IMG/VR virus record: IMGVR_UViG_3300030339_000003
Span: 1-64,000 of that record
DNA: 64,000 nt
Strand: one strand, 5' to 3'
In this document: piece by piece, positions 490 to 52,502 of the stretch
How the letters are laid out: every line of letters starts with the position of its first letter
How positions within the stretch are numbered: the first letter of the stretch is position 1
The notes under the pieces: model-generated
What the model saw: the letters and a program-made list of their open reading frames with translations, nothing else
Databases searched by the model: none
Told to the model about the DNA's origin: nothing
Program-made: the position numbers and the translations under genes

Positions 490-1404
490 TTAGAGTTGAA
501 GTTCAAAAATGGGGAATAGAGTAGAATTTACTGTGATCTGATTAGCCACTAACCCCATAGGCGTACCAGCCGGTTTATAAGCAACAGAGCGATTACTTGC
601 CAAATATGTATTGGTTATAATCTGTTCAACACTCGCATCATACATATAAAGTGCTTGGTCATTTACACTATTAAAAGATAATAATGGATCACGACTTGTT
701 GCATTAAAACTTGCCAATAATGCCGCCAATTCAGATTTATTTAAAGTAGAATCCATTTGAGACATTGTTCGATAAGACCCATTATAATAAATATCGGCTA
801 ATTCATTATTAGGGTTTTGTTCTGTAGTAAATTTAGTTGTAGCGTATGGAGCACGAACTAAATAACTGTTGGAATCTTTGGTCATAAACAAACCATATGT
901 TATTCTGTCTCGACCTGGAGGGTAAACAAACATTTTACCCATTCCATCATACGTCCGGACATTGCGAACAAACATAGTCCCGCTAATAAAAATAATCCGC
1001 CCACCCACAATCCATTTGTGGTAATACTGTAATGTGGCTTGGTTTTGTTTAGTTATACCAGATGCTGTAGCAATTTCGTCTTGATTAAAAAATAATGAGG
1101 CACTTATACTTCCGAAATAACCAAATTCCCAATCGCCTTTATTAATGGTAGTTGGTCCTGGTCCAGTATTAGGAAAATCTGCAAAAGGAATAATCTGCGA
1201 TTGCCCGGTATCCGTTCCGACTACAGTGTCGATCCGATAAAAATAAAGGGTATTGATATCCGTCGTTGTATCGGTATATGTTAATTGATCACCAGCAATT
1301 GTGTCAATTAAAACAAATGTACCAGTTCTACTGTTTGATCGCAGTATTTGAATTTGATCTGGCACAATACCATGGAAATTAGCCCAGCTCAAAACGATTG
1401 ACAT
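490..1404 (-). CDS. Virion structural protein (FN3-like N-terminus; baseplate/tail-tip paralog family)
   Basis: FN3-like LSW..YTD..YFYRI, then NTGPGPTT..GDWEFGYFG; C-terminal PIFEL. Confidence 0.8.
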   Translation of the reverse strand: MSIVLSWANFHGIVPDQIQILRSNSRTGTFVLIDTIAGDQLTYTDTTTDINTLYFYRIDTVVGTDTGQSQIIPFADFPNTGPGPTTINKGDWEFGYFGSISASLFFNQDEIATASGITKQNQATLQYYHKWIVGGRIIFISGTMFVRNVRTYDGMGKMFVYPPGRDRITYGLFMTKDSNSYLVRAPYATTKFTTEQNPNNELADIYYNGSYRTMSQMDSTLNKSELAALLASFNATSRDPLLSFNSVNDQALYMYDASVEQIITNTYLASNRSVAYKPAGTPMGLVANQITVNSTLFPIFELQL

Positions 1405-1424
1405 AAATGTACCTTGCTTTGGAA

Positions 1425-1452
1425 GTAGCAGTGAGCGCTAGCCCACCGCTAC
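1425..1452 (-). terminator. Intergenic stem-loop (terminator or processing/stability hairpin)
   Basis: Minus strand GUAGCGGUGGGC-UAGC-GCUCACUGCUAC, 12 bp with G-U pairs that form only on -. Confidence 0.6.
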
Positions 1453-1469
1453 GATTATTTACGGTTATG

Positions 1470-2369
1470 TTACAGCAGTAATTCCAATACAGGAACAACG
1501 TAAATCGTACCAGTTGTAATAGAAGTAATCACCCCTGTTGCGCTGTATACCGCCATAGAGTTCGCATTAGCTGCTAATCCTAAACCAATGGCGGTGTTAG
1601 CTTGGACAGTGGTGTCACCCAAATGGTAATACACGCCAGGTAATGACGAATCGTTTTGTGCAGTTAAGCCTGGTTTAACTGCCGTGGTGTTACCCAGAGA
1701 CGAGATCATTGCAGCTTCTGATTTAAGGAAGTCCAATGAAGTCGTGTCAACAGTTTGCGCCGTCAAGTAATTCGCGTCAACCAAAGACAGTGCCGGTAAG
1801 CGATAATGGAAATCATAACCATTTTTGCTTAATGTCAAACCAGCACTGATAGGCGGAGCAAAGCCAAGACCCGCCAACACTGGTAATTGCGCAACGTTAC
1901 TGATCCCGATATTTTGACGATAGGAATCAGGAATGAACAAAATACGTCCATTACAAACCACTTTGAAATACTTACCAATTTCGGTAGCATTCTTTGAACC
2001 AGTCACGTTAGCTGTGGTCAGCATGACGTTAATTTCTGATGCTGAGAACAAACTCGCGATAGGAACTTCACCAAAGAACCCGAACTCCCAGTCGCCACGT
2101 AACAATGATGTAGGACCGGGACCCGTGTCAGGGAAATAACCGACAGTAAAGACATTACCGTAAGTTTCAATGCCGCCGGAATCGACAGAAGAGATCATAA
2201 AGAAATATACTGTATTACTTACCACGTCAGTAAATTCTTTACTTACCGCAGGCGCAGCAACCGTAGTTGGGCTTGCAGGCAGATTCCCTTTATTAAACGT
2301 TGTGGTGGAACGGTAGATCTTGTAATTAGCTGCGCCATTGGCGGCATTCCAATTCAGAGTTAAAGACAT
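1470..2369 (-). CDS. Virion structural protein, paralog family
   Basis: FN3-like start; DTGPGPTSLLRGDWEFGFFGEV; C-terminal PVLELL. Confidence 0.8.
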   Translation of the reverse strand: MSLTLNWNAANGAANYKIYRSTTTFNKGNLPASPTTVAAPAVSKEFTDVVSNTVYFFMISSVDSGGIETYGNVFTVGYFPDTGPGPTSLLRGDWEFGFFGEVPIASLFSASEINVMLTTANVTGSKNATEIGKYFKVVCNGRILFIPDSYRQNIGISNVAQLPVLAGLGFAPPISAGLTLSKNGYDFHYRLPALSLVDANYLTAQTVDTTSLDFLKSEAAMISSLGNTTAVKPGLTAQNDSSLPGVYYHLGDTTVQANTAIGLGLAANANSMAVYSATGVITSITTGTIYVVPVLELLL

Positions 2370-2372
2370 TTA

Positions 2373-3287
2373 TTAATTCTCCACCAGTTCTAACACAGGC
2401 CACCAAAGGTTTGTAGCTGCCGCAGTCGCAATGGCAACATGAGAACCAGCAACTAAACCTGCACGCGCAGTAATGTTACCCAGCCCACGAGCTTGACCGT
2501 ATGCCGCGTTACTGGTTAACTCGGCAGTTAAAACGGTTTGGTTGGCAGAACCCATTGCCATTTGTGCACCGGTCTGTTGTACGATGTTTGGTAGTTTCTG
2601 ACCATTTGGCGTCCAAATAGATAACGGATAAACCAGATCATTGAATTCACAGGTATTGGCCAACACATCAGAGTCAGTAGCCGTAGCACTGTAAGTAGGT
2701 ACTGCGCCAGTGTCACTGAAACCAGACATCAAACGAACTTTGTATGCGTTACCGTTGTAGTTATATACCAACGTGCCATCAATCGCACCAGCGTTAGCTA
2801 ATTGCGAACGGTTCAGTGTTGTGCCCACTGCGGAGTTCGGGACAAACAGAACTTTACCTTTACGGCTGAATTTATGCCAGAACGTAGGGACTGCAGAAGA
2901 AGCCACGATACCAGTAGCTTGGCTAGAAACCAATGAACGTAAACCAGCAGCATTGATTAAACCATCAATAACGACGCTACCGAAGTAACCGAGGTTATCG
3001 TCACCCATCTGAAGGTTGTTAGGACCTTCACCGCGTGTACGAGTTGCTTGGGTATAAAAGTTACGACTGATTTGACGGTCTTTAGAACCGATGGTTTCAA
3101 AGACGTAGTAATACCAGGCATCTTGAACAGCAGTGGTATCATTGAATACCAGAGTAGATGCAGTCTGCTGGGTCAGCGTACCAATTGGGGTTCCCAAGTT
3201 AGTACGATCGATTACCGTGGCAGAACGATAGATATTAACATCCACCGCCTCGGTATTCGTGTTTTGCATCTGTAACTGTACAGTCAT
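2373..3287 (-). CDS. Virion structural protein, paralog family
   Basis: GEGPNNLQMGDDNLGYFG, WHKFSRKGKVLFVP, WWPVLELV. Confidence 0.8.
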   Translation of the reverse strand: MTVQLQMQNTNTEAVDVNIYRSATVIDRTNLGTPIGTLTQQTASTLVFNDTTAVQDAWYYYVFETIGSKDRQISRNFYTQATRTRGEGPNNLQMGDDNLGYFGSVVIDGLINAAGLRSLVSSQATGIVASSAVPTFWHKFSRKGKVLFVPNSAVGTTLNRSQLANAGAIDGTLVYNYNGNAYKVRLMSGFSDTGAVPTYSATATDSDVLANTCEFNDLVYPLSIWTPNGQKLPNIVQQTGAQMAMGSANQTVLTAELTSNAAYGQARGLGNITARAGLVAGSHVAIATAAATNLWWPVLELVEN

Positions 3288-3296
3288 GTTAAATCC

Positions 3297-4964
3297 TTAA
3301 TGAAGTAAACTTAATGGAATAGGGATTGGGAAAGCAGAAGGTTTTCTGATTGTTTTAACCGTGGCCATCGTGTAACCGGTATAAACAACTTTGTCAGGCA
3401 CGCCAACTGTTTTAAAGTTGATAGACTTAATCGTCTTAACAACATTAAAGGTTGTAGGAAGCACAACAACTGGAGTAGAACTACCACCAGGATAGGCGTG
3501 CAATAAACGAACCCCTTTAACCGTATTAGTTAAGGCATAAGTTGCAGACGTAATTTGACGCGGAATAACATCAACTTTAAATTGCAGAATTTTCTTTAAA
3601 GCATTCTGAATAGTTGAATAACTGAATACCGGAGCTAAAGCGGCACCGCCTTGATACAGCGAACCAGTCGCACGCACGGCCCTTACAACATCTGTTAAGG
3701 CAAACGTAGCTGATGTGACTTTATCAGGGCTTAGTGACGCTTTGATGCCCATCATTTTACGCACCGCGCCTTGTGTTAACGACGTGTGGTTAATGACTGG
3801 AACCGGATGACCTAATTCTAAATTCACTACATTTAATGAATTTAAATTCTTAACACCAATTAGAATCAATAAAGGACGCCATGCAACGTAGTTGTCAACA
3901 CCTCCCGCGCCAATGACTTCTTTTGATGTTAAAGCAGTAGCGCCACGACTGTAGATCAATCCATCGGTATCTGAAACAATCGTCTGGTCACCAATGATCG
4001 GGTCACCGTTACCGTCTAACCCAATGTTCATGTTCGCATTAGTAAAGACTTCCCAATGCGTATTTGTTGGGTCATCACGATGCACACGATAAATCAGATC
4101 TTCCCACTCATTACTACCCAGGTCACCCAATCCCCTCGGTGTCCCAACATAATAACGGCTTTTCCCGATGGTTGCTAACTTAGTACGGTTAATTAAACCC
4201 GCTGTGACTAAGTTATTATAACTGATTTGGTTAACAACAGTTTTCTGAGCAATATACATGATCTGCCCATAATAACTAAACTTTAACCAAATGCTATCAG
4301 GTGTAATAGTGTGTGCTGTACCTAATCCGACTAATGAAGCCAATGACCCTGTCGTGATAAGATCTTTACCCAACACTTGTCCAAGGTAACCTAACGTCCA
4401 ATTACCTTTAATAATTTTAGATTCGTCAAAACGAACAAGTAACATTTCGCCGGATAAATAGTTACTGTTAATCTTTACAACCCAACCATTGTCAGTTGTA
4501 TCGACTAAAGAAACATCATCTGCGCTAATTCGGTAGTTAGAAATGTCCTCGAGTTGGTCTAACGCGGCATTCAAAACCCCAGTGTAATCTACAAAGTTAG
4601 TTAAAACAATTTGTGCAACTTTAACGTTCTCGCCGTCATTATACTTGTAAACACCCTTAGCATTAAGATTCAATAATGTCGTTAGGTCTTCAATCGTATC
4701 ATCAACGGTAAAATTCAGAACAACCGGGCCTAACAACGTTGCGCATTCCCATTCCTGGTCTACTGCATCGATCTTTAAAGATTGTGATTCTAAACGTGCA
4801 ATACGTTTATTCTCATTTTCCGGAACGATATCAATAGAAACGACTTCGATGTTATCCACAGTAACTTGATCTAAGCGTTCTACCGCCGAAGGACGATCTT
4901 GATAAGTTACTTTGTTAATTGCTATGAATTTGTCGAGTAACAGTTGCATGGCGTTAGGACCCAT
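3297..4964 (-). CDS. Virion/tail-associated protein carrying the family domain plus C-terminal repeats
   Basis: GNWTLGYLG..WLKFSYYG..WRPLLIL; start moved to ATG 4964 (SD AGAGGA) because ATG 5021 lies in a terminator tail. Confidence 0.75.
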   Translation of the reverse strand: MGPNAMQLLLDKFIAINKVTYQDRPSAVERLDQVTVDNIEVVSIDIVPENENKRIARLESQSLKIDAVDQEWECATLLGPVVLNFTVDDTIEDLTTLLNLNAKGVYKYNDGENVKVAQIVLTNFVDYTGVLNAALDQLEDISNYRISADDVSLVDTTDNGWVVKINSNYLSGEMLLVRFDESKIIKGNWTLGYLGQVLGKDLITTGSLASLVGLGTAHTITPDSIWLKFSYYGQIMYIAQKTVVNQISYNNLVTAGLINRTKLATIGKSRYYVGTPRGLGDLGSNEWEDLIYRVHRDDPTNTHWEVFTNANMNIGLDGNGDPIIGDQTIVSDTDGLIYSRGATALTSKEVIGAGGVDNYVAWRPLLILIGVKNLNSLNVVNLELGHPVPVINHTSLTQGAVRKMMGIKASLSPDKVTSATFALTDVVRAVRATGSLYQGGAALAPVFSYSTIQNALKKILQFKVDVIPRQITSATYALTNTVKGVRLLHAYPGGSSTPVVVLPTTFNVVKTIKSINFKTVGVPDKVVYTGYTMATVKTIRKPSAFPIPIPLSLLH

Positions 4965-5002
4965 ATCTTTGTTCCTCTTAGTGTTAAGCATAAAATCAGA
5001 AA

Positions 5003-5053
5003 TAAAAAATAAAGCATACATATAGCAGACCTAGAGGGTTTCCCCTCTAAGTC
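5003..5053 (-). terminator. Hairpin terminator with GAAA loop
   Basis: GACUUAGAGGG-GAAA-CCCUCUAGGUC, then spacer and CUUUAUUUUUU. Confidence 0.75.
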
Positions 5054-5205
5054 CGCAAGTATCATTGTTTGAGTTGTTTTTGTTTAAATTAAACGGGCCT
5101 GTGTTAACCCAATCGTTGGAACGAAAGAACACCGATATCGAGTATCGATCTTTTAATTTGTAACTTTGTTTATTCTTCCGTATATACTATTATTTATAGT
5201 AAATA
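5028..5205 (-). ncRNA. Candidate structured non-coding RNA
   Basis: Interval with no credible ORF between two terminators; 74-nt multi-stem fold at 5086-5159 with minus-specific G-U pairs. Confidence 0.4.
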
Positions 5206-5248
5206 AAAAAATAAAGAAATAGCTGGCAAGGAGCCGAAGCTCCTCACC
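5203..5248 (-). terminator. Hairpin terminator with UUCG loop
   Basis: GGUGAGGAGC-UUCG-GCUCCUUGCC, then AGCUAUUUCUUUAUUUUUUU. Confidence 0.8.
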
Positions 5249-5255
5249 ATATAGG

Positions 5256-5555
5256 TTAAAAGATCAGTTGACCTAAACGAATGATTTCATCATAATCCAT
5301 GATAACCGTTTGGCGATTGTCAATAGACACTTTGAAAGAGTGTTTGTTCACTAATCCGTTGTAATGGATGGCAATAGGTGTTTCACCGATGACACCGGTA
5401 GCGATACCCGTTACACCGATAAACATAGTTGATAATTCCGAGTCTTGCCCGTGGATAGTGCCTTTACGAATGGTAGCACCATGAGAAGGAATACCGTCGA
5501 CCTGGGTTAACGACAAGAAATGTTTCAGTGTTTGTTCTAACAAGTTGTCATCCAT
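5256..5555 (-). CDS. Hypothetical protein
   Basis: 99-aa ORF with SD GAGG. Confidence 0.75.
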   Translation of the reverse strand: MDDNLLEQTLKHFLSLTQVDGIPSHGATIRKGTIHGQDSELSTMFIGVTGIATGVIGETPIAIHYNGLVNKHSFKVSIDNRQTVIMDYDEIIRLGQLIF

Positions 5556-6067: not shown

Positions 6068-6153
6068 AATAACCTCTAGTCTAAAAATACGTTTATATAC
6101 ATAGAGATCACATAGAGGTTAAAAAATAATAGACAAAAATTAAAGGGCAGATC

Positions 6154-6466: not shown

Positions 6467-6477
6467 AATAAGCCACC

Positions 6478-6942
6478 TTATTGGTAAATAGCAATACCTG
6501 TAGGATTGCGGGCTAATAAAACTTTGTTTGTTTCAAAACACAATCGAGCGTCATCATAAGAATCGCTAACACGCAAGACCATAATAGGTGGCATGTGCTC
6601 ATCCGGAACTGTGCCGTTTTTCATTTGTAATAAAGATTCGGATTCTTGGAATCGACGACTAAACATATCAGAGACAACATTGATTTCCAATGAATCTATA
6701 AACTCTTTACTTAATCCTTCTAAATACGTTCTTTTCCAGATGGTTAATTTTGAAAGAATAACGTCACCGAATGCTTCAGGTGAAAGAGATGGAGAAACAT
6801 TATTAGTCAATTCTTCCATTAAGTTTGCATAGTTTATTTTGTTAGCATTAATAAAGAAATGCTTACTTAAAACTAATGAACATTCTTTACGTTCTTCTTC
6901 GGACAACGGTGGAACATATTGTTTAATATTAACGATACCCAT
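6478..6942 (-). CDS. Hypothetical protein, PL[ST]xE paralog family
   Basis: KQYVPPLSEEERKEC; start probably ATG 6942, just after the upstream stop. Confidence 0.7.
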   Translation of the reverse strand: MGIVNIKQYVPPLSEEERKECSLVLSKHFFINANKINYANLMEELTNNVSPSLSPEAFGDVILSKLTIWKRTYLEGLSKEFIDSLEINVVSDMFSRRFQESESLLQMKNGTVPDEHMPPIMVLRVSDSYDDARLCFETNKVLLARNPTGIAIYQ

Positions 6943-6944
6943 AA

Positions 6945-7073
6945 TTACATCCACCCTAATACTTTACCGATGATGATACCAATACCTGCAATACCAAAAG
7001 AGGCAAGGATAACAAAAACCCAAAATAATGCTTTAATGCCGTCTTCAAATGCTTTAGTTACAGGGTTGCTCAT
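6945..7073 (-). CDS. Small membrane protein (42 aa)
   Basis: Manual: MSNPVTKAFEDGIKALFWVFVILASFGIAGIGIIIGKVLGWM; TAATG-coupled to the upstream gene, SD AAGGA. Confidence 0.7.
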   Translation of the reverse strand: MSNPVTKAFEDGIKALFWVFVILASFGIAGIGIIIGKVLGWM

Positions 7074-7654
7074 TACGCGTCCTTAAACTTGTTATCGAAA
7101 ATAGATTGTATTTCAGATATCCAGTTATTGATAATATCACGGTCAGTTTCGCTAAATTTATTAACATCCAACGGGAATGTCGGCAATTTATAAACTGCCG
7201 GCGCAGATGAAGGATGAACAATTTCTGTAGCGCGAGCAAGCAATAATTCATCTGGAATATTTTTGTAATATGCCGGATAAATGATAGTATCTAATTCACC
7301 TAACAAAAGTTTATTAGTAAAGGAATTAAAACAGATTTTCCACAATTGTTCATCATTGGTATCTTGAATCTCGAAATTTAATTTATTTACGAAATCAAGA
7401 GAACAAAGATTAAAATATTGTGTTTTCCAATTATTAAATACTTCGGATACCGCATGAGCATAATAAATTTTCATTGCGTGAATTGATAAATTGTTGGCGT
7501 CTGACATTTTGATTTGTGCAAGCGCTTTAGTTAATGCCTTACCAGCTCTGAGTTGATCTTGTTTATTCCCTGCGGTTGATACCAACCAATAGCACTGTTC
7601 GCGTTCATGTGGAGTTAACGGTAAAGTGCATAAATTAAATTTAGACGTATCCAT
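7073..7654 (-). CDS. Hypothetical protein, PL[ST]xE paralog family
   Basis: LCTLPLTPHEREQC; WKTQY..S.DFV segment shared with the 6478 ORF. Confidence 0.75.
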   Translation of the reverse strand: MDTSKFNLCTLPLTPHEREQCYWLVSTAGNKQDQLRAGKALTKALAQIKMSDANNLSIHAMKIYYAHAVSEVFNNWKTQYFNLCSLDFVNKLNFEIQDTNDEQLWKICFNSFTNKLLLGELDTIIYPAYYKNIPDELLLARATEIVHPSSAPAVYKLPTFPLDVNKFSETDRDIINNWISEIQSIFDNKFKDA

Positions 7655-7662
7655 AGGTCACC

Positions 7663-7794
7663 TTATTTTAAACAATATTCAAAAAAAGTATTGTTATTAC
7701 TAAACAGTTTATTAATGGCGTGTTGATAACGAATACCATGTTCAGCAGTCAATGGAGGGAAAAATTGATTAACATTAATCGATACTTTAGACAT
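7663..7794 (-). CDS. Small protein (43 aa), PL[ST]xE family fragment
   Basis: Manual: MSKVSINVNQFFPPLTAEHGIRYQHAINKLFSNNNTFFEYCLK; SD AAGGA; first gene after the early promoter. Confidence 0.65.
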   Translation of the reverse strand: MSKVSINVNQFFPPLTAEHGIRYQHAINKLFSNNNTFFEYCLK

Positions 7795-7810
7795 TACATA
7801 TTCCTTATTA

Positions 7811-7862
7811 ACTAGAGTAAATTAAGATGGGATTAATCTACTCTAGTAATGTAGGGTTGAGA
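7811..7862 (-). promoter_or_regulatory. phiKZ-type early promoter plus 5' hairpin
   Basis: TCAACCC-TACATTAC (core 7846-7853); 15-bp stem at 7811-7847. Confidence 0.7.
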
Positions 7863-7885
7863 TCTTTTGTATTACAACGTTTTAA

Positions 7886-19691: not shown

Positions 19692-19735
19692 TTAAATAGA
19701 GTGGTTAACTACTTAAGTAATATAGGTTTAAAAAT
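19692..19735 (-). promoter_or_regulatory. phiKZ-type early promoter plus 5' hairpin
   Basis: TTTTTAAACC-TATATTAC (core 19717-19724) followed by the stem TTAAGTAG/CTATTTAA. Confidence 0.75.
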
Positions 19736-19738
19736 ATA

Positions 19739-19768
19739 TACTACTATCTCCTAACGGAGATAGTAGTA
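19739..19768. terminator. Hairpin terminator
   Basis: TACTACTATCTCC-TAAC-GGAGATAGTAGTA. Confidence 0.8.
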
Positions 19769-23785: not shown

Positions 23786-23796
23786 TGTATTTTTTA

Positions 23797-24243
23797 TTAT
23801 GGCGCTGTGGTAGTCTTTGCTTTAGAGCTTTTTGTACGTGGAACGACTTTCTTCTTAGCTTTGATGGCTTCGAGTTCAGCCGGAAGTTTTCCTAATTCAA
23901 CTTTAATTTGTTTCAGCAAAGAGCTGTTACTAAAGTCTAGGTCTTCCTGTACCTTTGTTGTGAGCTTAGTACTTTGATTGTCGATATCATCCAAAATGAA
24001 GCGGATGTTTTCATTAAGTCGGTCAATCTTTTCATCAGTTGCAACTGATTGGGTATCAATGGCACTCAAATAGATTTCCAATTGATCCAAACGTGTTGCG
24101 ATACTTCCAAACTTGCGTTCAAACATCCTTTCAAAATCATAAGGCGTCATGAACATACAGACGTACTTATTCCAAAGTACAAACAAGATGAGTACTGACA
24201 AACCCCCCGTTAAAACTTGTAAATAAATCATACAATACTCCAT
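23797..24243 (-). CDS. Membrane-anchored coiled-coil protein
   Basis: N-terminal TM, heptad region, basic tail. Confidence 0.7.
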   Translation of the reverse strand: MEYCMIYLQVLTGGLSVLILFVLWNKYVCMFMTPYDFERMFERKFGSIATRLDQLEIYLSAIDTQSVATDEKIDRLNENIRFILDDIDNQSTKLTTKVQEDLDFSNSSLLKQIKVELGKLPAELEAIKAKKKVVPRTKSSKAKTTTAP

Positions 24244-52455: not shown

Positions 52456-52472
52456 AAATAAAGCATACATAA

Positions 52473-52502
52473 CCTAATCCTACCCGAAAGGGTAGGATTA
52501 GG
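52473..52502. terminator. Bidirectional terminator
   Basis: CCTAATCCTACCC-GAAA-GGGTAGGATTAGG. Confidence 0.85.

What the first reader, a model, noticed from the sequence alone, without database searches (positions are those of the whole stretch)
5028..5205. Terminator-bounded, ORF-less unit folding into a tRNA-sized multi-stem RNA: candidate novel phage ncRNA
Seen: about 150 nt between two strong terminators (5225-5248 and 5028-5053) with no credible ORF, in an otherwise dense genome. On the minus strand, 5159-5086 (74 nt) forms a closing stem AAAUUAAA/UUUAAUUU around three hairpins: AUCGAUA/UAUCGGU, UCG-UUCCAA-CGA and GGGUU-AACACA-GGCCC. The G-U pairs work only on -. The GUGUU segment can pair with loop AACAC (pseudoknot or alternative fold), the middle loop contains U-CCA-A like a Trp anticodon loop, and an A/C-rich single strand precedes the terminator. 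Inference: a tRNA mimic or anticodon-nuclease decoy, an antitoxin-like pseudoknot RNA, or a small ribozyme. It is not a canonical tRNA.
Basis: partly seen in the sequence, partly recalled or inferred. Interest (0 to 1): 0.7.

Follow-up and report, generated by a model that had tools for sequence, protein, structure and literature searches.

The report
Conserved small RNA in jumbo phage
A gene-free stretch of about 160 bases in a giant phage genome very likely encodes a small folded RNA that at least six related uncultivated phages keep, with matching base-pair changes; it is not the tRNA-like molecule first proposed, and its job is unknown.

Summary
The window is the start of a 231-kb jumbo phage of the phiKZ/RisingSun type that encodes its own RNA polymerase. 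The two terminators, the lack of an ORF and the minus-strand specificity are real. The proposed 74-nt tRNA-sized cloverleaf is not supported. It folds no better than shuffled sequence (z -0.88). Its closing stem and middle 'CCA' hairpin are absent from relatives and are hit by strain polymorphisms. ARAGORN and Rfam find nothing.

A different fold is conserved in six lineages whose neighbouring virion protein is only 30-62% identical. A 9-bp helix P1 (5180-5172/5130-5122) encloses an A-rich 5' bulge and hairpin H1 (5149-5131). Hairpin H3 (5110-5095), an A/C-rich linker and terminator 2 (5056-5025) follow. On a hand-made structural alignment, 97.5% of cells pair, 17 of 21 pairs show compensatory double changes, and 0 of 2000 shuffles match this.

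A conserved T-run plus TTAC block sits about 22-26 nt upstream of P1, like phiKZ middle promoters. The downstream virion gene has its own TATG-type promoter after terminator 2.

Best reading: a self-contained small-RNA gene of about 160 nt, of the kind seen as short promoter-proximal RNAs in phiKZ. It is a new RNA family. No transcript data exist and the function is unknown.

The parts
5224..5249 (-). Terminator 1. An 11-bp GC-rich hairpin with a UUCG loop, then a U-rich run. It ends the phosphoesterase / 99-aa gene unit.
   Evidence: Present in window, L003, L006, L169, L178. Absent in L004 and L168, where the element follows the upstream gene directly.
5181..5210 (-). Promoter-like block: T-run, TTTACT, AT-only inverted repeat TACTAT/ATAGTA (5201-5196 / 5190-5185), then the palindrome GTATATAC. 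The TTAC core lies about 22 nt upstream of the P1 5' end. The TSS is inferred within about 5187-5176.
   Evidence: 80-83% identical to L006 and L004, against 64-74% for flanking genes. Core invariant in alignment A1. T-run plus TTAC(T) (TTCAC in L169) is present 22-26 nt upstream of P1 in all six lineages. Resembles the phiKZ middle-promoter motif AAanTTACc centred near -24 (PMC4666361). The extended 24-nt block and its 13-nt core TAATAGTATATAC (no other match at <=1 mismatch) occur once in this genome.
5172..5180 (-). P1, 5' strand (CGGAAGAAU).
   Evidence: Pairs with 5130-5122. It is the MFE and centroid in every lineage. 8 of 9 pairs show double compensatory changes.
5150..5171 (-). J1: an A-rich 5'-side bulge of 22 nt (9-23 nt in relatives).
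   Evidence: Always unpaired in the per-lineage folds of window, L169 and L168.
5131..5149 (-). H1 hairpin: AUCGAUA / CUCGA loop / UAUCGGU. It abuts the P1 3' strand with no spacer.
   Evidence: 7 of 7 pairs covary across lineages. Four double changes between window and L006 in the tool count. Strain SNP 5132 turns U.G into U-A.
5122..5130 (-). P1, 3' strand (GUUCUUUCG).
5095..5121 (-). J3 plus hairpin H3 (GGGUU / AACACA / GGCCC, 5110-5095). It holds the best-conserved primary sequence, AACGAUUGGGUUAAC.
   Evidence: Alignment A1. H3 is paired in 100% of cells, mostly through one-sided G-U changes. The ACGAUU..GGUUAA motif recurs in L006 and L178.
5057..5094 (-). A/C-rich, G-poor single-stranded linker with AAN repeats (AACAAAAACAAC..AACAAU).
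   Evidence: AAnAAnAA density is 1.9 per 100 nt, against 0.12 in the genome's other minus-strand gaps. It is similarly raised in 4 further lineages and is zero in L168.
5025..5056 (-). Terminator 2: a 14-bp hairpin with a GAAA loop, the inferred 3' end of the RNA.
   Evidence: The stem is entirely different in sequence but kept in all lineages. Strain SNP 5054 turns G.U into A-U.
5014..5024 (-). Post-terminator motif UAUAUGUAUGC, which contains TATG. It recurs after many terminators of this genome.
   Evidence: An AUAUG or close variant follows term2 in all six lineages.
4962..4996 (-). TATG-type late promoter ATTTTATG (G at 4989), a 25-nt 5'UTR with SD AAGAGGA, and the ATG (4964-4962) of the 555-aa virion structural protein. 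This is the neighbour of the RNA, not part of it.
   Evidence: Invariant block in A1. TTTTATG is enriched upstream of genes. phiKZ late promoters are T(-3)ATG(+1) (PMC4666361). Protein family phrog_21620.

Best explanation
The gap holds a self-contained gene for a non-coding RNA of about 160 nt on the minus strand (roughly 5187/5176 to about 5020).

Shown:
- The sequence is conserved and has no ORF.
- It folds, in six phage lineages, into the same architecture. A 7-11-bp helix P1 closes around an A-rich 5' bulge and a hairpin H1, and H1 stacks directly on the P1 3' strand. A short hairpin H3, an A/C-rich single strand and a strong terminator hairpin follow.

Inferred:
- The phage's own multisubunit RNA polymerase starts the RNA just upstream of P1. 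It would use the conserved T-run plus TTAC block, which looks like a phiKZ middle-class promoter.
- Most transcripts stop at terminator 2.
- The virion-protein gene downstream is driven separately by its own TATG-type late promoter.
- The RNA acts as a riboregulator. Its conserved unpaired segments (AACGAUUGGGUUAAC and the A/C-rich linker) would contact a partner RNA or protein, and P1/H1 would give shape and stability.

It is the same kind of object as the short promoter-proximal RNAs detected in phiKZ, but it is an unrelated new RNA family.
For: Structure:
- Each lineage's own MFE and centroid gives P1 + bulge + H1 (z -1.7 to -4.4). The full-length MFE of the window shows the same fold.
- On the hand-made structural alignment of six lineages, 97.5% of cells pair. 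17 of 21 pairs have double compensatory changes, and 0 of 2000 column shuffles reach this.
- The tool count on a CM-made alignment (window, L003, L006) gives 100% paired and 5 double changes. Slid controls give 41-52% paired and 0 double changes.
- Strain SNPs 5132 and 5054 convert G.U to A-U.
- G.U pairs exist only on the minus strand.

Conservation:
- The RNA body is 64-66% identical to L006 and L004, like the flanking genes (64-74%). The promoter-like block is 80-83% identical.
- In close strains there are 2 SNPs and 2 indels in 178 nt of RNA, against about 12 SNPs in 145 nt of the upstream gene.

Non-coding: no conserved frame or start codon, and frameshift indels occur in close strains.

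Autonomy:
- The upstream context differs between lineages. It is the 99-aa gene plus term1, or the phosphoesterase gene directly, or an unrelated gene. The promoter-like block is always there.
- The downstream gene has its own invariant TATG promoter and 5'UTR after term2.
- Related lineages without the element have only a terminator plus TTATG.

Promoter analogy:
- phiKZ middle promoters carry AAanTTACc at about -24 (PMC4666361).
- The neighbouring phosphoesterase gene has TTTTTTA(A)CC plus TATG.
- The genome encodes RNAP beta'/beta-like pieces.

Precedent: phiKZ makes abundant short RNAs (71 nt and 141 nt, confirmed by Northern blot) that end at terminators just downstream of promoters (PMC10914365).
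Against: - No transcript evidence. The only 'RNA-Seq' run holding the sequence is flagged as probably DNA, and it has three low-depth contigs.
- The promoter is inferred by analogy only. The extended motif occurs once in the genome, it lacks TATG, and the TSS is not mapped.
- In L004 and L168 no terminator separates the element from the upstream gene, so it could also be made as a 3'UTR.
- The element always sits next to the same downstream gene, which also fits a role in cis.
- The six-lineage alignment was fitted by hand to the structure.
- Covariance models built from the close lineages find L178 (E 0.009). They find L004 and L169 only weakly (E 0.39 and 5.2) and miss L168. Homology of the distant lineages therefore rests on synteny plus architecture.
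- No target or partner was found. The best complementarity hit is not conserved.
Confidence: 0.6

Rival explanations
1. It is a cis-acting leader (5'UTR element) of the virion structural gene cluster. Transcripts from the upstream promoter either stop at terminator 2 or read through it. The structured 5' domain would set how many read through, by attenuation or anti-termination. The short RNA would then be a by-product or a secondary product.
For: The element lies directly upstream of the same orthologous gene in all six lineages, while the upstream neighbour changes. In phiKZ, 34 of 42 terminators inside 5'UTRs give both a short RNA and a long mRNA with the same 5' end (PMC10914365).
Against: The gene has its own invariant TATG promoter and 5'UTR downstream of term2. 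Term2 is a very stable 14-bp hairpin. No alternative anti-terminator pairing conserved across lineages was seen on manual inspection. No Rfam riboswitch or leader matches.
Confidence: 0.2
2. It is a processed 3'UTR-derived RNA with no promoter of its own. Transcription from the upstream operon runs through (or past a leaky term1), and nucleases trim the transcript to the stable structured core.
For: In L004 and L168 the element follows the upstream stop codon with no terminator between. PAK_P3 ncRNA1 and ncRNA2 arise this way (PMC10914365). The AT hairpin plus UAUAC just upstream resembles the base of this genome's terminators.
Against: Four lineages have a strong terminator (term1) between the upstream gene and the element. 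The most conserved non-coding block (80-83%) lies just upstream of P1 and carries a TTAC motif at promoter-like spacing in all six lineages.
Confidence: 0.1
3. One reading: a tRNA mimic or anticodon-nuclease decoy, a type III antitoxin-like pseudoknot RNA, or a small self-cleaving ribozyme.
For: The excised 74-nt piece does fold into a four-way junction as its MFE. The 8-nt closing complementarity exists in this genome.
Against: The fold is no better than shuffles, is not the MFE in context and is not conserved. The 'CCA' loop is polymorphic or deleted. ARAGORN and Rfam are negative, including tRNA, ToxI and ribozyme models at E<=10. There are no ToxI-type tandem repeats and no adjacent toxin gene.
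Confidence: 0.03
4. It is not a functional RNA. It would be a DNA-level element (a protein-binding palindrome, or a remnant of a decayed gene or terminator) or a tiny protein-coding gene.
For: The upstream block contains two DNA palindromes (TACTAT/ATAGTA and GTATATAC). A 33-aa GTG frame exists in the window.
Against: Helices are kept through compensatory changes and through G.U pairs that work on only one strand. Conservation equals that of coding DNA across lineages with 30-62% protein identity. No frame or start codon is conserved.
Confidence: 0.05

Closest known systems
Short promoter-proximal ('5'UTR-derived') ncRNA candidates of Pseudomonas phage phiKZ, e.g. the 141-nt RNA upstream of PHIKZ302 and the 71-nt RNA upstream of PHIKZ221 (Putzeys et al. 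2024, PMC10914365)
   Same: Both come from a jumbo phage with its own multisubunit RNAPs. Both are ORF-less stretches of less than 250 nt between a phage promoter and a hairpin terminator, just upstream of a gene, and both are conserved in relatives. The terminators share a hairpin followed by a TTAT/TATG-like motif.
   Different: There is no sequence or structural homology. The covariance models give nothing in the PHIKZ302 region, and that RNA folds as a row of simple hairpins. Here the RNA has not been observed experimentally, whereas the secondary structure has covariation support that the phiKZ candidates, as far as the paper states, lack.
put RNAs of phage HK022 (cis-acting anti-termination RNAs; from general knowledge, not tested)
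   Same: Both are promoter-proximal two-stem-loop RNA domains lying upstream of terminators and a long phage operon.
   Different: put acts on host RNAP and has two stems separated by one nucleotide. Here the polymerase would be a non-canonical phage enzyme, the stems are 10-17 nt apart, and the downstream gene has its own promoter. No functional evidence exists.
CrcZ/CrcY-type Hfq-titrating sRNAs of Pseudomonas (AAnAAnAA 'CA motifs'; general knowledge; Rfam RF01675)
   Same: Several AAnAAnAA motifs lie in unpaired A/C-rich segments, enriched over the genome's other gaps in 5 of 6 lineages.
   Different: There is no Rfam match to the RNA body. The only CrcZ hit is E=7.2 on terminator 1. The motif is absent in L168, the 3' tail is UAUAUGUAUGC rather than a U-run, and the host is unknown.
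tRNA and tRNA-like structures
   Same: The size of the excised 74-nt piece, and a four-way junction in its isolated MFE.
   Different: There is no acceptor, D or T-arm signature. It is not detected by ARAGORN or Rfam, and the junction is neither conserved nor better than shuffles.

Membership tests
tRNA / tRNA mimic | Cloverleaf with a 7-bp acceptor stem, a 5-bp anticodon stem with a 7-nt loop, and a T-arm with a conserved loop; detectable by ARAGORN or Rfam tRNA models | tested here: not met
   ARAGORN finds 0 genes in 64 kb. Rfam gives no match at gathering thresholds or at E<=10. The fold has z -0.88.
tRNA / tRNA mimic | The anticodon-like loop is conserved among relatives | tested here: not met
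   The 'CCA' loop is UCA in L003, X6 and X14, and is deleted in L006. Its stem shares bases with the conserved helix P1.
Type III toxin-antitoxin RNA antitoxin (ToxI-like) | Tandem direct repeats of about 34-36 nt, followed by a terminator and an endoribonuclease toxin gene | tested here: not met
   Only A/T-rich micro-repeats are found. The downstream gene is a virion structural protein, phrog_21620.
Small self-cleaving ribozymes (hammerhead, twister, pistol, hatchet, HDV-like) | A match to the family covariance model | tested here: not met
   cmscan of 4900-5350 at E<=10 gives only snoRNA, miRNA, pemK and CrcZ noise. The relatives are also negative.
phiKZ-type short promoter-proximal ncRNA (Putzeys 2024) | A terminator within 250 nt downstream of a phage promoter and upstream of the next gene's start | tested here: met
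   Term2 ends about 160 nt after the promoter-like block and 60 nt before the ATG.
phiKZ-type short promoter-proximal ncRNA (Putzeys 2024) | A phage-RNAP promoter or TSS at the 5' end | tested here: inconclusive
   T-run plus TTAC lies 22-26 nt upstream of P1 in six lineages, like the phiKZ middle motif at -24. No TSS data exist, and the extended motif occurs once in the genome.
phiKZ-type short promoter-proximal ncRNA (Putzeys 2024) | No ORF of 10 aa or more preceded by a Shine-Dalgarno sequence; sequence conserved in relatives | tested here: met
   No conserved frame or start codon. Conserved in six lineages.
phiKZ-type short promoter-proximal ncRNA (Putzeys 2024) | A discrete short transcript seen by RNA-seq or Northern blot | not testable with these tools
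   No usable RNA run. X23 is probably DNA.
Hfq-binding / CrcZ-like sponge | Multiple AAnAAnAA motifs in all members, plus a U-rich 3' tail | tested here: inconclusive
   The motif is enriched in 5 of 6 lineages and is zero in L168. The tail after term2 is UAUAUGUAUGCUUU, not a plain U-run.
6S RNA | A match to the Rfam 6S models; a long closed helix with a two-sided central bubble | tested here: not met
   No Rfam match. The bulge is one-sided.

The most novel reading that the evidence does not exclude
The 5' domain (P1/bulge/H1 plus H3) could be a protein-directed RNA rather than a base-pairing one. One version is a put-like element acting in cis on the phage's non-canonical multisubunit RNA polymerase. 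Transcripts from the middle-type promoter would then pass terminator 2 and run into the virion gene cluster. The other version is a decoy that titrates a host or phage RNA-binding protein, for example Hfq through the AAN repeats, and so helps to time the middle-to-late switch.
Probability: 0.1. Interest if true: 0.8.

Novelty: new member of a known kind. Interest (0 to 1): 0.5.

Why it matters
Nucleus-forming and related jumbo phages transcribe their genomes with their own unusual polymerases. phiKZ is known to make many short RNAs of unknown role. Those candidates rest on transcript data from a single phage.

This element has the complementary kind of support. Its fold is preserved by compensatory evolution across lineages whose proteins have diverged to 30% identity, so selection acts on the RNA itself. 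That gives a defined structure, P1/H1/H3, for mutational tests. It also gives a first covariance-model seed for a jumbo-phage RNA family absent from Rfam. The conserved promoter-like block could help to define middle-class promoters outside phiKZ.

Tried and rejected
- Known RNA families and tRNAs: Rfam at gathering thresholds and at E<=10, on the window and on relatives, gave nothing. ARAGORN found none.
- Early-promoter reading of CCTATAT at 5255: the site lacks the TAC core and is not conserved.
- Sigma-70 promoter: none at 9 of 12 matches or better in front of the RNA.
- Paralogues: CM R1 finds no second copy in the 231-kb genome. There is no hit in phiKZ, RisingSun or the Salmonella-assembly jumbo phage.
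- Target prediction: duplex scan against all phage translation-initiation regions. The best hit is an 11-nt match near gene 1470-2369. It is not conserved in L006 or L004, so it is chance. A 10-nt complementarity between the RNA and the end of the 99-aa gene (I5) is also not conserved.
- H3 plus GUUUAAUUU as an internal terminator: the U-rich tail is not conserved (L169, L178).
- RNA evidence: the one 'RNA-Seq' run is probably DNA.
- Collection scans: 17-mer scans of viral and metagenome contigs returned almost only chance hits, and only L087, which is the same phage. The 15-mer AACGATTGGGTTAAC scan also returned chance hits.
- MAFFT could not align the distant lineages structurally, so the six-lineage alignment was made by hand.

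Full report
**Context.** The window is the first 64 kb of a 231,366-bp IMG/VR virus record with 39.5% G+C. Its virion proteins resemble those of Erwinia phages RisingSun and Joad and of the phiKZ/phiPA3/201phi2-1 group. The genome encodes beta'-like and beta-like RNA-polymerase pieces. It is therefore a jumbo phage that transcribes with its own polymerases.

A crude ORF map gives about 93.5% coding and a median gap of 27 nt. K-mer enrichment upstream of genes recovers three things:
- An early-type promoter, tttcaRaCCTATATTACTTAGGTGTA, with about 28 copies, all on the minus strand.
- A TATG-type motif, TTTTATG, 30-50 nt upstream of many starts.
- A family of strong tetraloop terminators, often followed by TATATGT(A/T)TGCTTT.

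**The observation.** On the minus strand the order is as follows:
- Stop codon of a 99-aa gene (5256).
- Terminator 1 (5249-5224).
- An AT-rich block.
- About 160 nt without a gene.
- Terminator 2 (5056-5025).
- UAUAUGUAUGC.
- ATTTTATG (G at 4989), a Shine-Dalgarno sequence, and the ATG (4964) of a 555-aa virion structural protein.

The long-ORF start at 5021 is an artefact, because orthologues align from the ATG at 4964. The gap is 291 nt, among the half-dozen largest in the genome.

It is no more stable than shuffles (z -0.88). The full-length MFE is a different structure. ARAGORN and Rfam find nothing, even at E<=10.

**Relatives.** Searches with the neighbouring virion protein and contig look-ups gave these members:
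- The same species: L003 (94% aa) and L087.
- Five further lineages carrying an element at the same place: L004/L005 (62%), L006 (56%), L168 (35%), L169/L176/L177/L179/L180 (32-36%) and L178 (30%).

Other relatives have only a terminator plus a TTATG promoter at this spot, or a different gene order. These are L167, L171/L172, RisingSun and a jumbo phage in a Salmonella assembly.

The upstream neighbour varies. It is the 99-aa gene plus terminator 1 in window, L006 and L169. It is the phosphoesterase gene directly in L004, and an unrelated gene in L168. In L178 only terminator 1 is visible, because the contig ends there. The downstream neighbour is always the orthologous virion gene with its own promoter.

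**Not coding.** No reading frame or start codon is shared. L006 has a 20-codon stop-to-stop frame without a start. A 1-nt indel in the A-run (5077) in near-identical strains shifts the window's 33-aa GTG frame.

**The conserved structure.** Folding the 5' domain of each lineage alone gives the same MFE and centroid architecture every time (z -1.7 to -4.4). The window's antisense strand does not form it.

| Part | Window coordinates | Range in relatives |
|---|---|---|
| P1 helix | 5180-5172 with 5130-5122 (9 bp) | 7-11 bp |
| A-rich 5' bulge (J1) | 5171-5150 (22 nt) | 9-23 nt |
| Hairpin H1, abutting the P1 3' strand | 5149-5131 (7 bp) | 5-7 bp |
| Hairpin H3 | 5110-5095 | 4-5 bp |

After H3 come an A/C-rich linker and terminator 2.

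The helices differ almost completely in sequence between lineages. For P1, for example:
- CGGAAGAAU/GUUCUUUCG (window)
- CAGAAGAAU/GUUCUUCUG (L006)
- GUGGUAAAC/GUUUAUCAC (L169)
- GAUAGUGGU/GCCACUAUC (L168)

On a hand-made structural alignment of six lineages, 97.5% of cells are standard pairs. 17 of 21 pairs show double compensatory changes, and none of 2000 column shuffles reaches any measure.

A tool count on an Infernal-made alignment of window, L003 and L006 gives 100% paired and 5 double changes. Partners slid by 1-3 columns give 41-52% paired and no double change.

Two polymorphisms in close strains convert G.U to A-U: 5132 in H1 and 5054 in terminator 2.

The caveat is that the six-lineage alignment is fitted to the structure. 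Covariance models from the close lineages reach L178 (E 0.009). They reach L004 and L169 only weakly and miss L168. Homology of the distant members therefore rests on synteny plus architecture.

**Conservation.** Against L006 and L004 the RNA body is 64-66% identical, like the flanking genes at 64-74%. The 30 nt upstream of P1 are 80-83% identical.

**Promoter inference.** All six lineages have a T-run followed by TTAC(T) (TTCAC in L169), whose first T lies 22-26 nt upstream of the P1 5' end. A TATATA(C/G)G-like stretch then runs up to P1. L168 has TTATG there instead.

phiKZ middle promoters carry AAanTTACc centred at about -24, sometimes with TATG at the start site. Late promoters are T(-3)ATG(+1) (PMC4666361; PMC7598289; PMC8244752).

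The neighbouring phosphoesterase gene has TTTTTTA(A)CC plus TATG-TATATAAAC in the window and in L004. I therefore infer a middle-type promoter with a start within about 5187-5176.

This is analogy, not proof. The extended block occurs once in the genome and no 5'-end data exist.

**Expression data.** None are usable. The single 'RNA-Seq' metagenome run that holds the sequence is flagged as probably DNA. It contributes three low-depth read-length contigs.

**Function.** This is unknown.
- A duplex scan against all phage translation-initiation regions gave one 11-nt match. It is not conserved in L006 or L004, so it is taken as chance.
- AAnAAnAA motifs are about 5-27-fold denser than in the genome's other gaps in five lineages, but absent in L168.
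- There is no paralogue in the genome, and no similarity to the phiKZ PHIKZ302-upstream RNA.

**Comparison with known systems.** The closest known kind is the set of short RNAs of phiKZ and other virulent phages. They end at terminators just downstream of promoters, and two were confirmed by Northern blot. Their roles are unknown (PMC10914365).

The present element meets the sequence-level criteria of that kind. Its promoter criterion is inconclusive and its transcript criterion cannot be tested here. It is not homologous to the phiKZ RNAs and is absent from Rfam. I therefore file it as a new member (a new RNA family) of a known kind.

**Verdict.**
- The proposed fold and the tRNA, antitoxin and ribozyme readings are rejected.
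- The core claim, a novel structured phage ncRNA, is well supported by comparative evidence (about 0.8 that it is a selected RNA structure).
- The reading as an autonomous small-RNA gene gets about 0.6.
- Interest is 0.5.

Noticed in passing
window 7854, 19725, 23729, 26053, 34568 (minus strand); about 28 sites genome-wide: A long early-type promoter consensus, tttcaRaCCTA(T/C)ATTA(C/T)TTAGGTGTA. All copies are on the minus strand and almost all lie in intergenic DNA. The relative L006 has the same motif (L006 about 1850). It is analogous to the AT-rich early promoters of phiKZ-like phages.
   Followed up: partly
window 5014-5024, 52470-52480, 23790-23800, 19730-19745 and many sites outside the window: Strong tetraloop terminators, several with near-identical stems such as TAACTACTACTCCC-loop-GGGAGTAGTAGTTA. 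They are typically followed by TATATGT(A/T)TGCTTT. That motif contains TATG, the phiKZ late start-site motif. phiKZ terminators likewise carry a TTAT(G/T) after the hairpin. Terminator and late promoter may be coupled modules.
   Followed up: partly
window 490-4964 (minus strand): A run of paralogous virion structural protein genes (phrog_1062/21620/16120/3589). The same array of 4-6 paralogues of about 300 aa follows the 555-aa gene in all relatives and in RisingSun gp198-204.
   Followed up: no
window 6473-7659: One related strain (run X13) has a contig that skips 1185 bp here, removing the 158-aa and 193-aa early genes (6478-6954 and 7073-7654). This is a strain-level deletion or insertion.
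   Followed up: no
window 6094-6110 (minus strand); L006 about 2865; L004 about 65: The promoter of the phosphoesterase gene: TTTTTTA(A)CC, about 15 nt, then TATG-TATATAAAC. It is conserved in three lineages and combines a middle-type TTAC element with a TATG start.
   Followed up: partly
window 7800-7847 (minus strand): A 15-bp AT-rich hairpin starts inside the early promoter at 7854. A small unannotated ORF of about 45 aa lies in the 231-nt gap 7655-7885.
   Followed up: no
window 5256-5555 (minus strand): The 99-aa protein has no Pfam or PHROG match. It is conserved (31% identity) next to the element in L169 and is also present in L006, but it is absent in L004 and L168.
   Followed up: partly
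genome 1-127 and 231240-231366: The 'direct terminal repeat' is about 127 bp, the size of an assembler k-mer overlap. The record may be a circularly closed assembly rather than one that shows the true physical ends.
   Followed up: no
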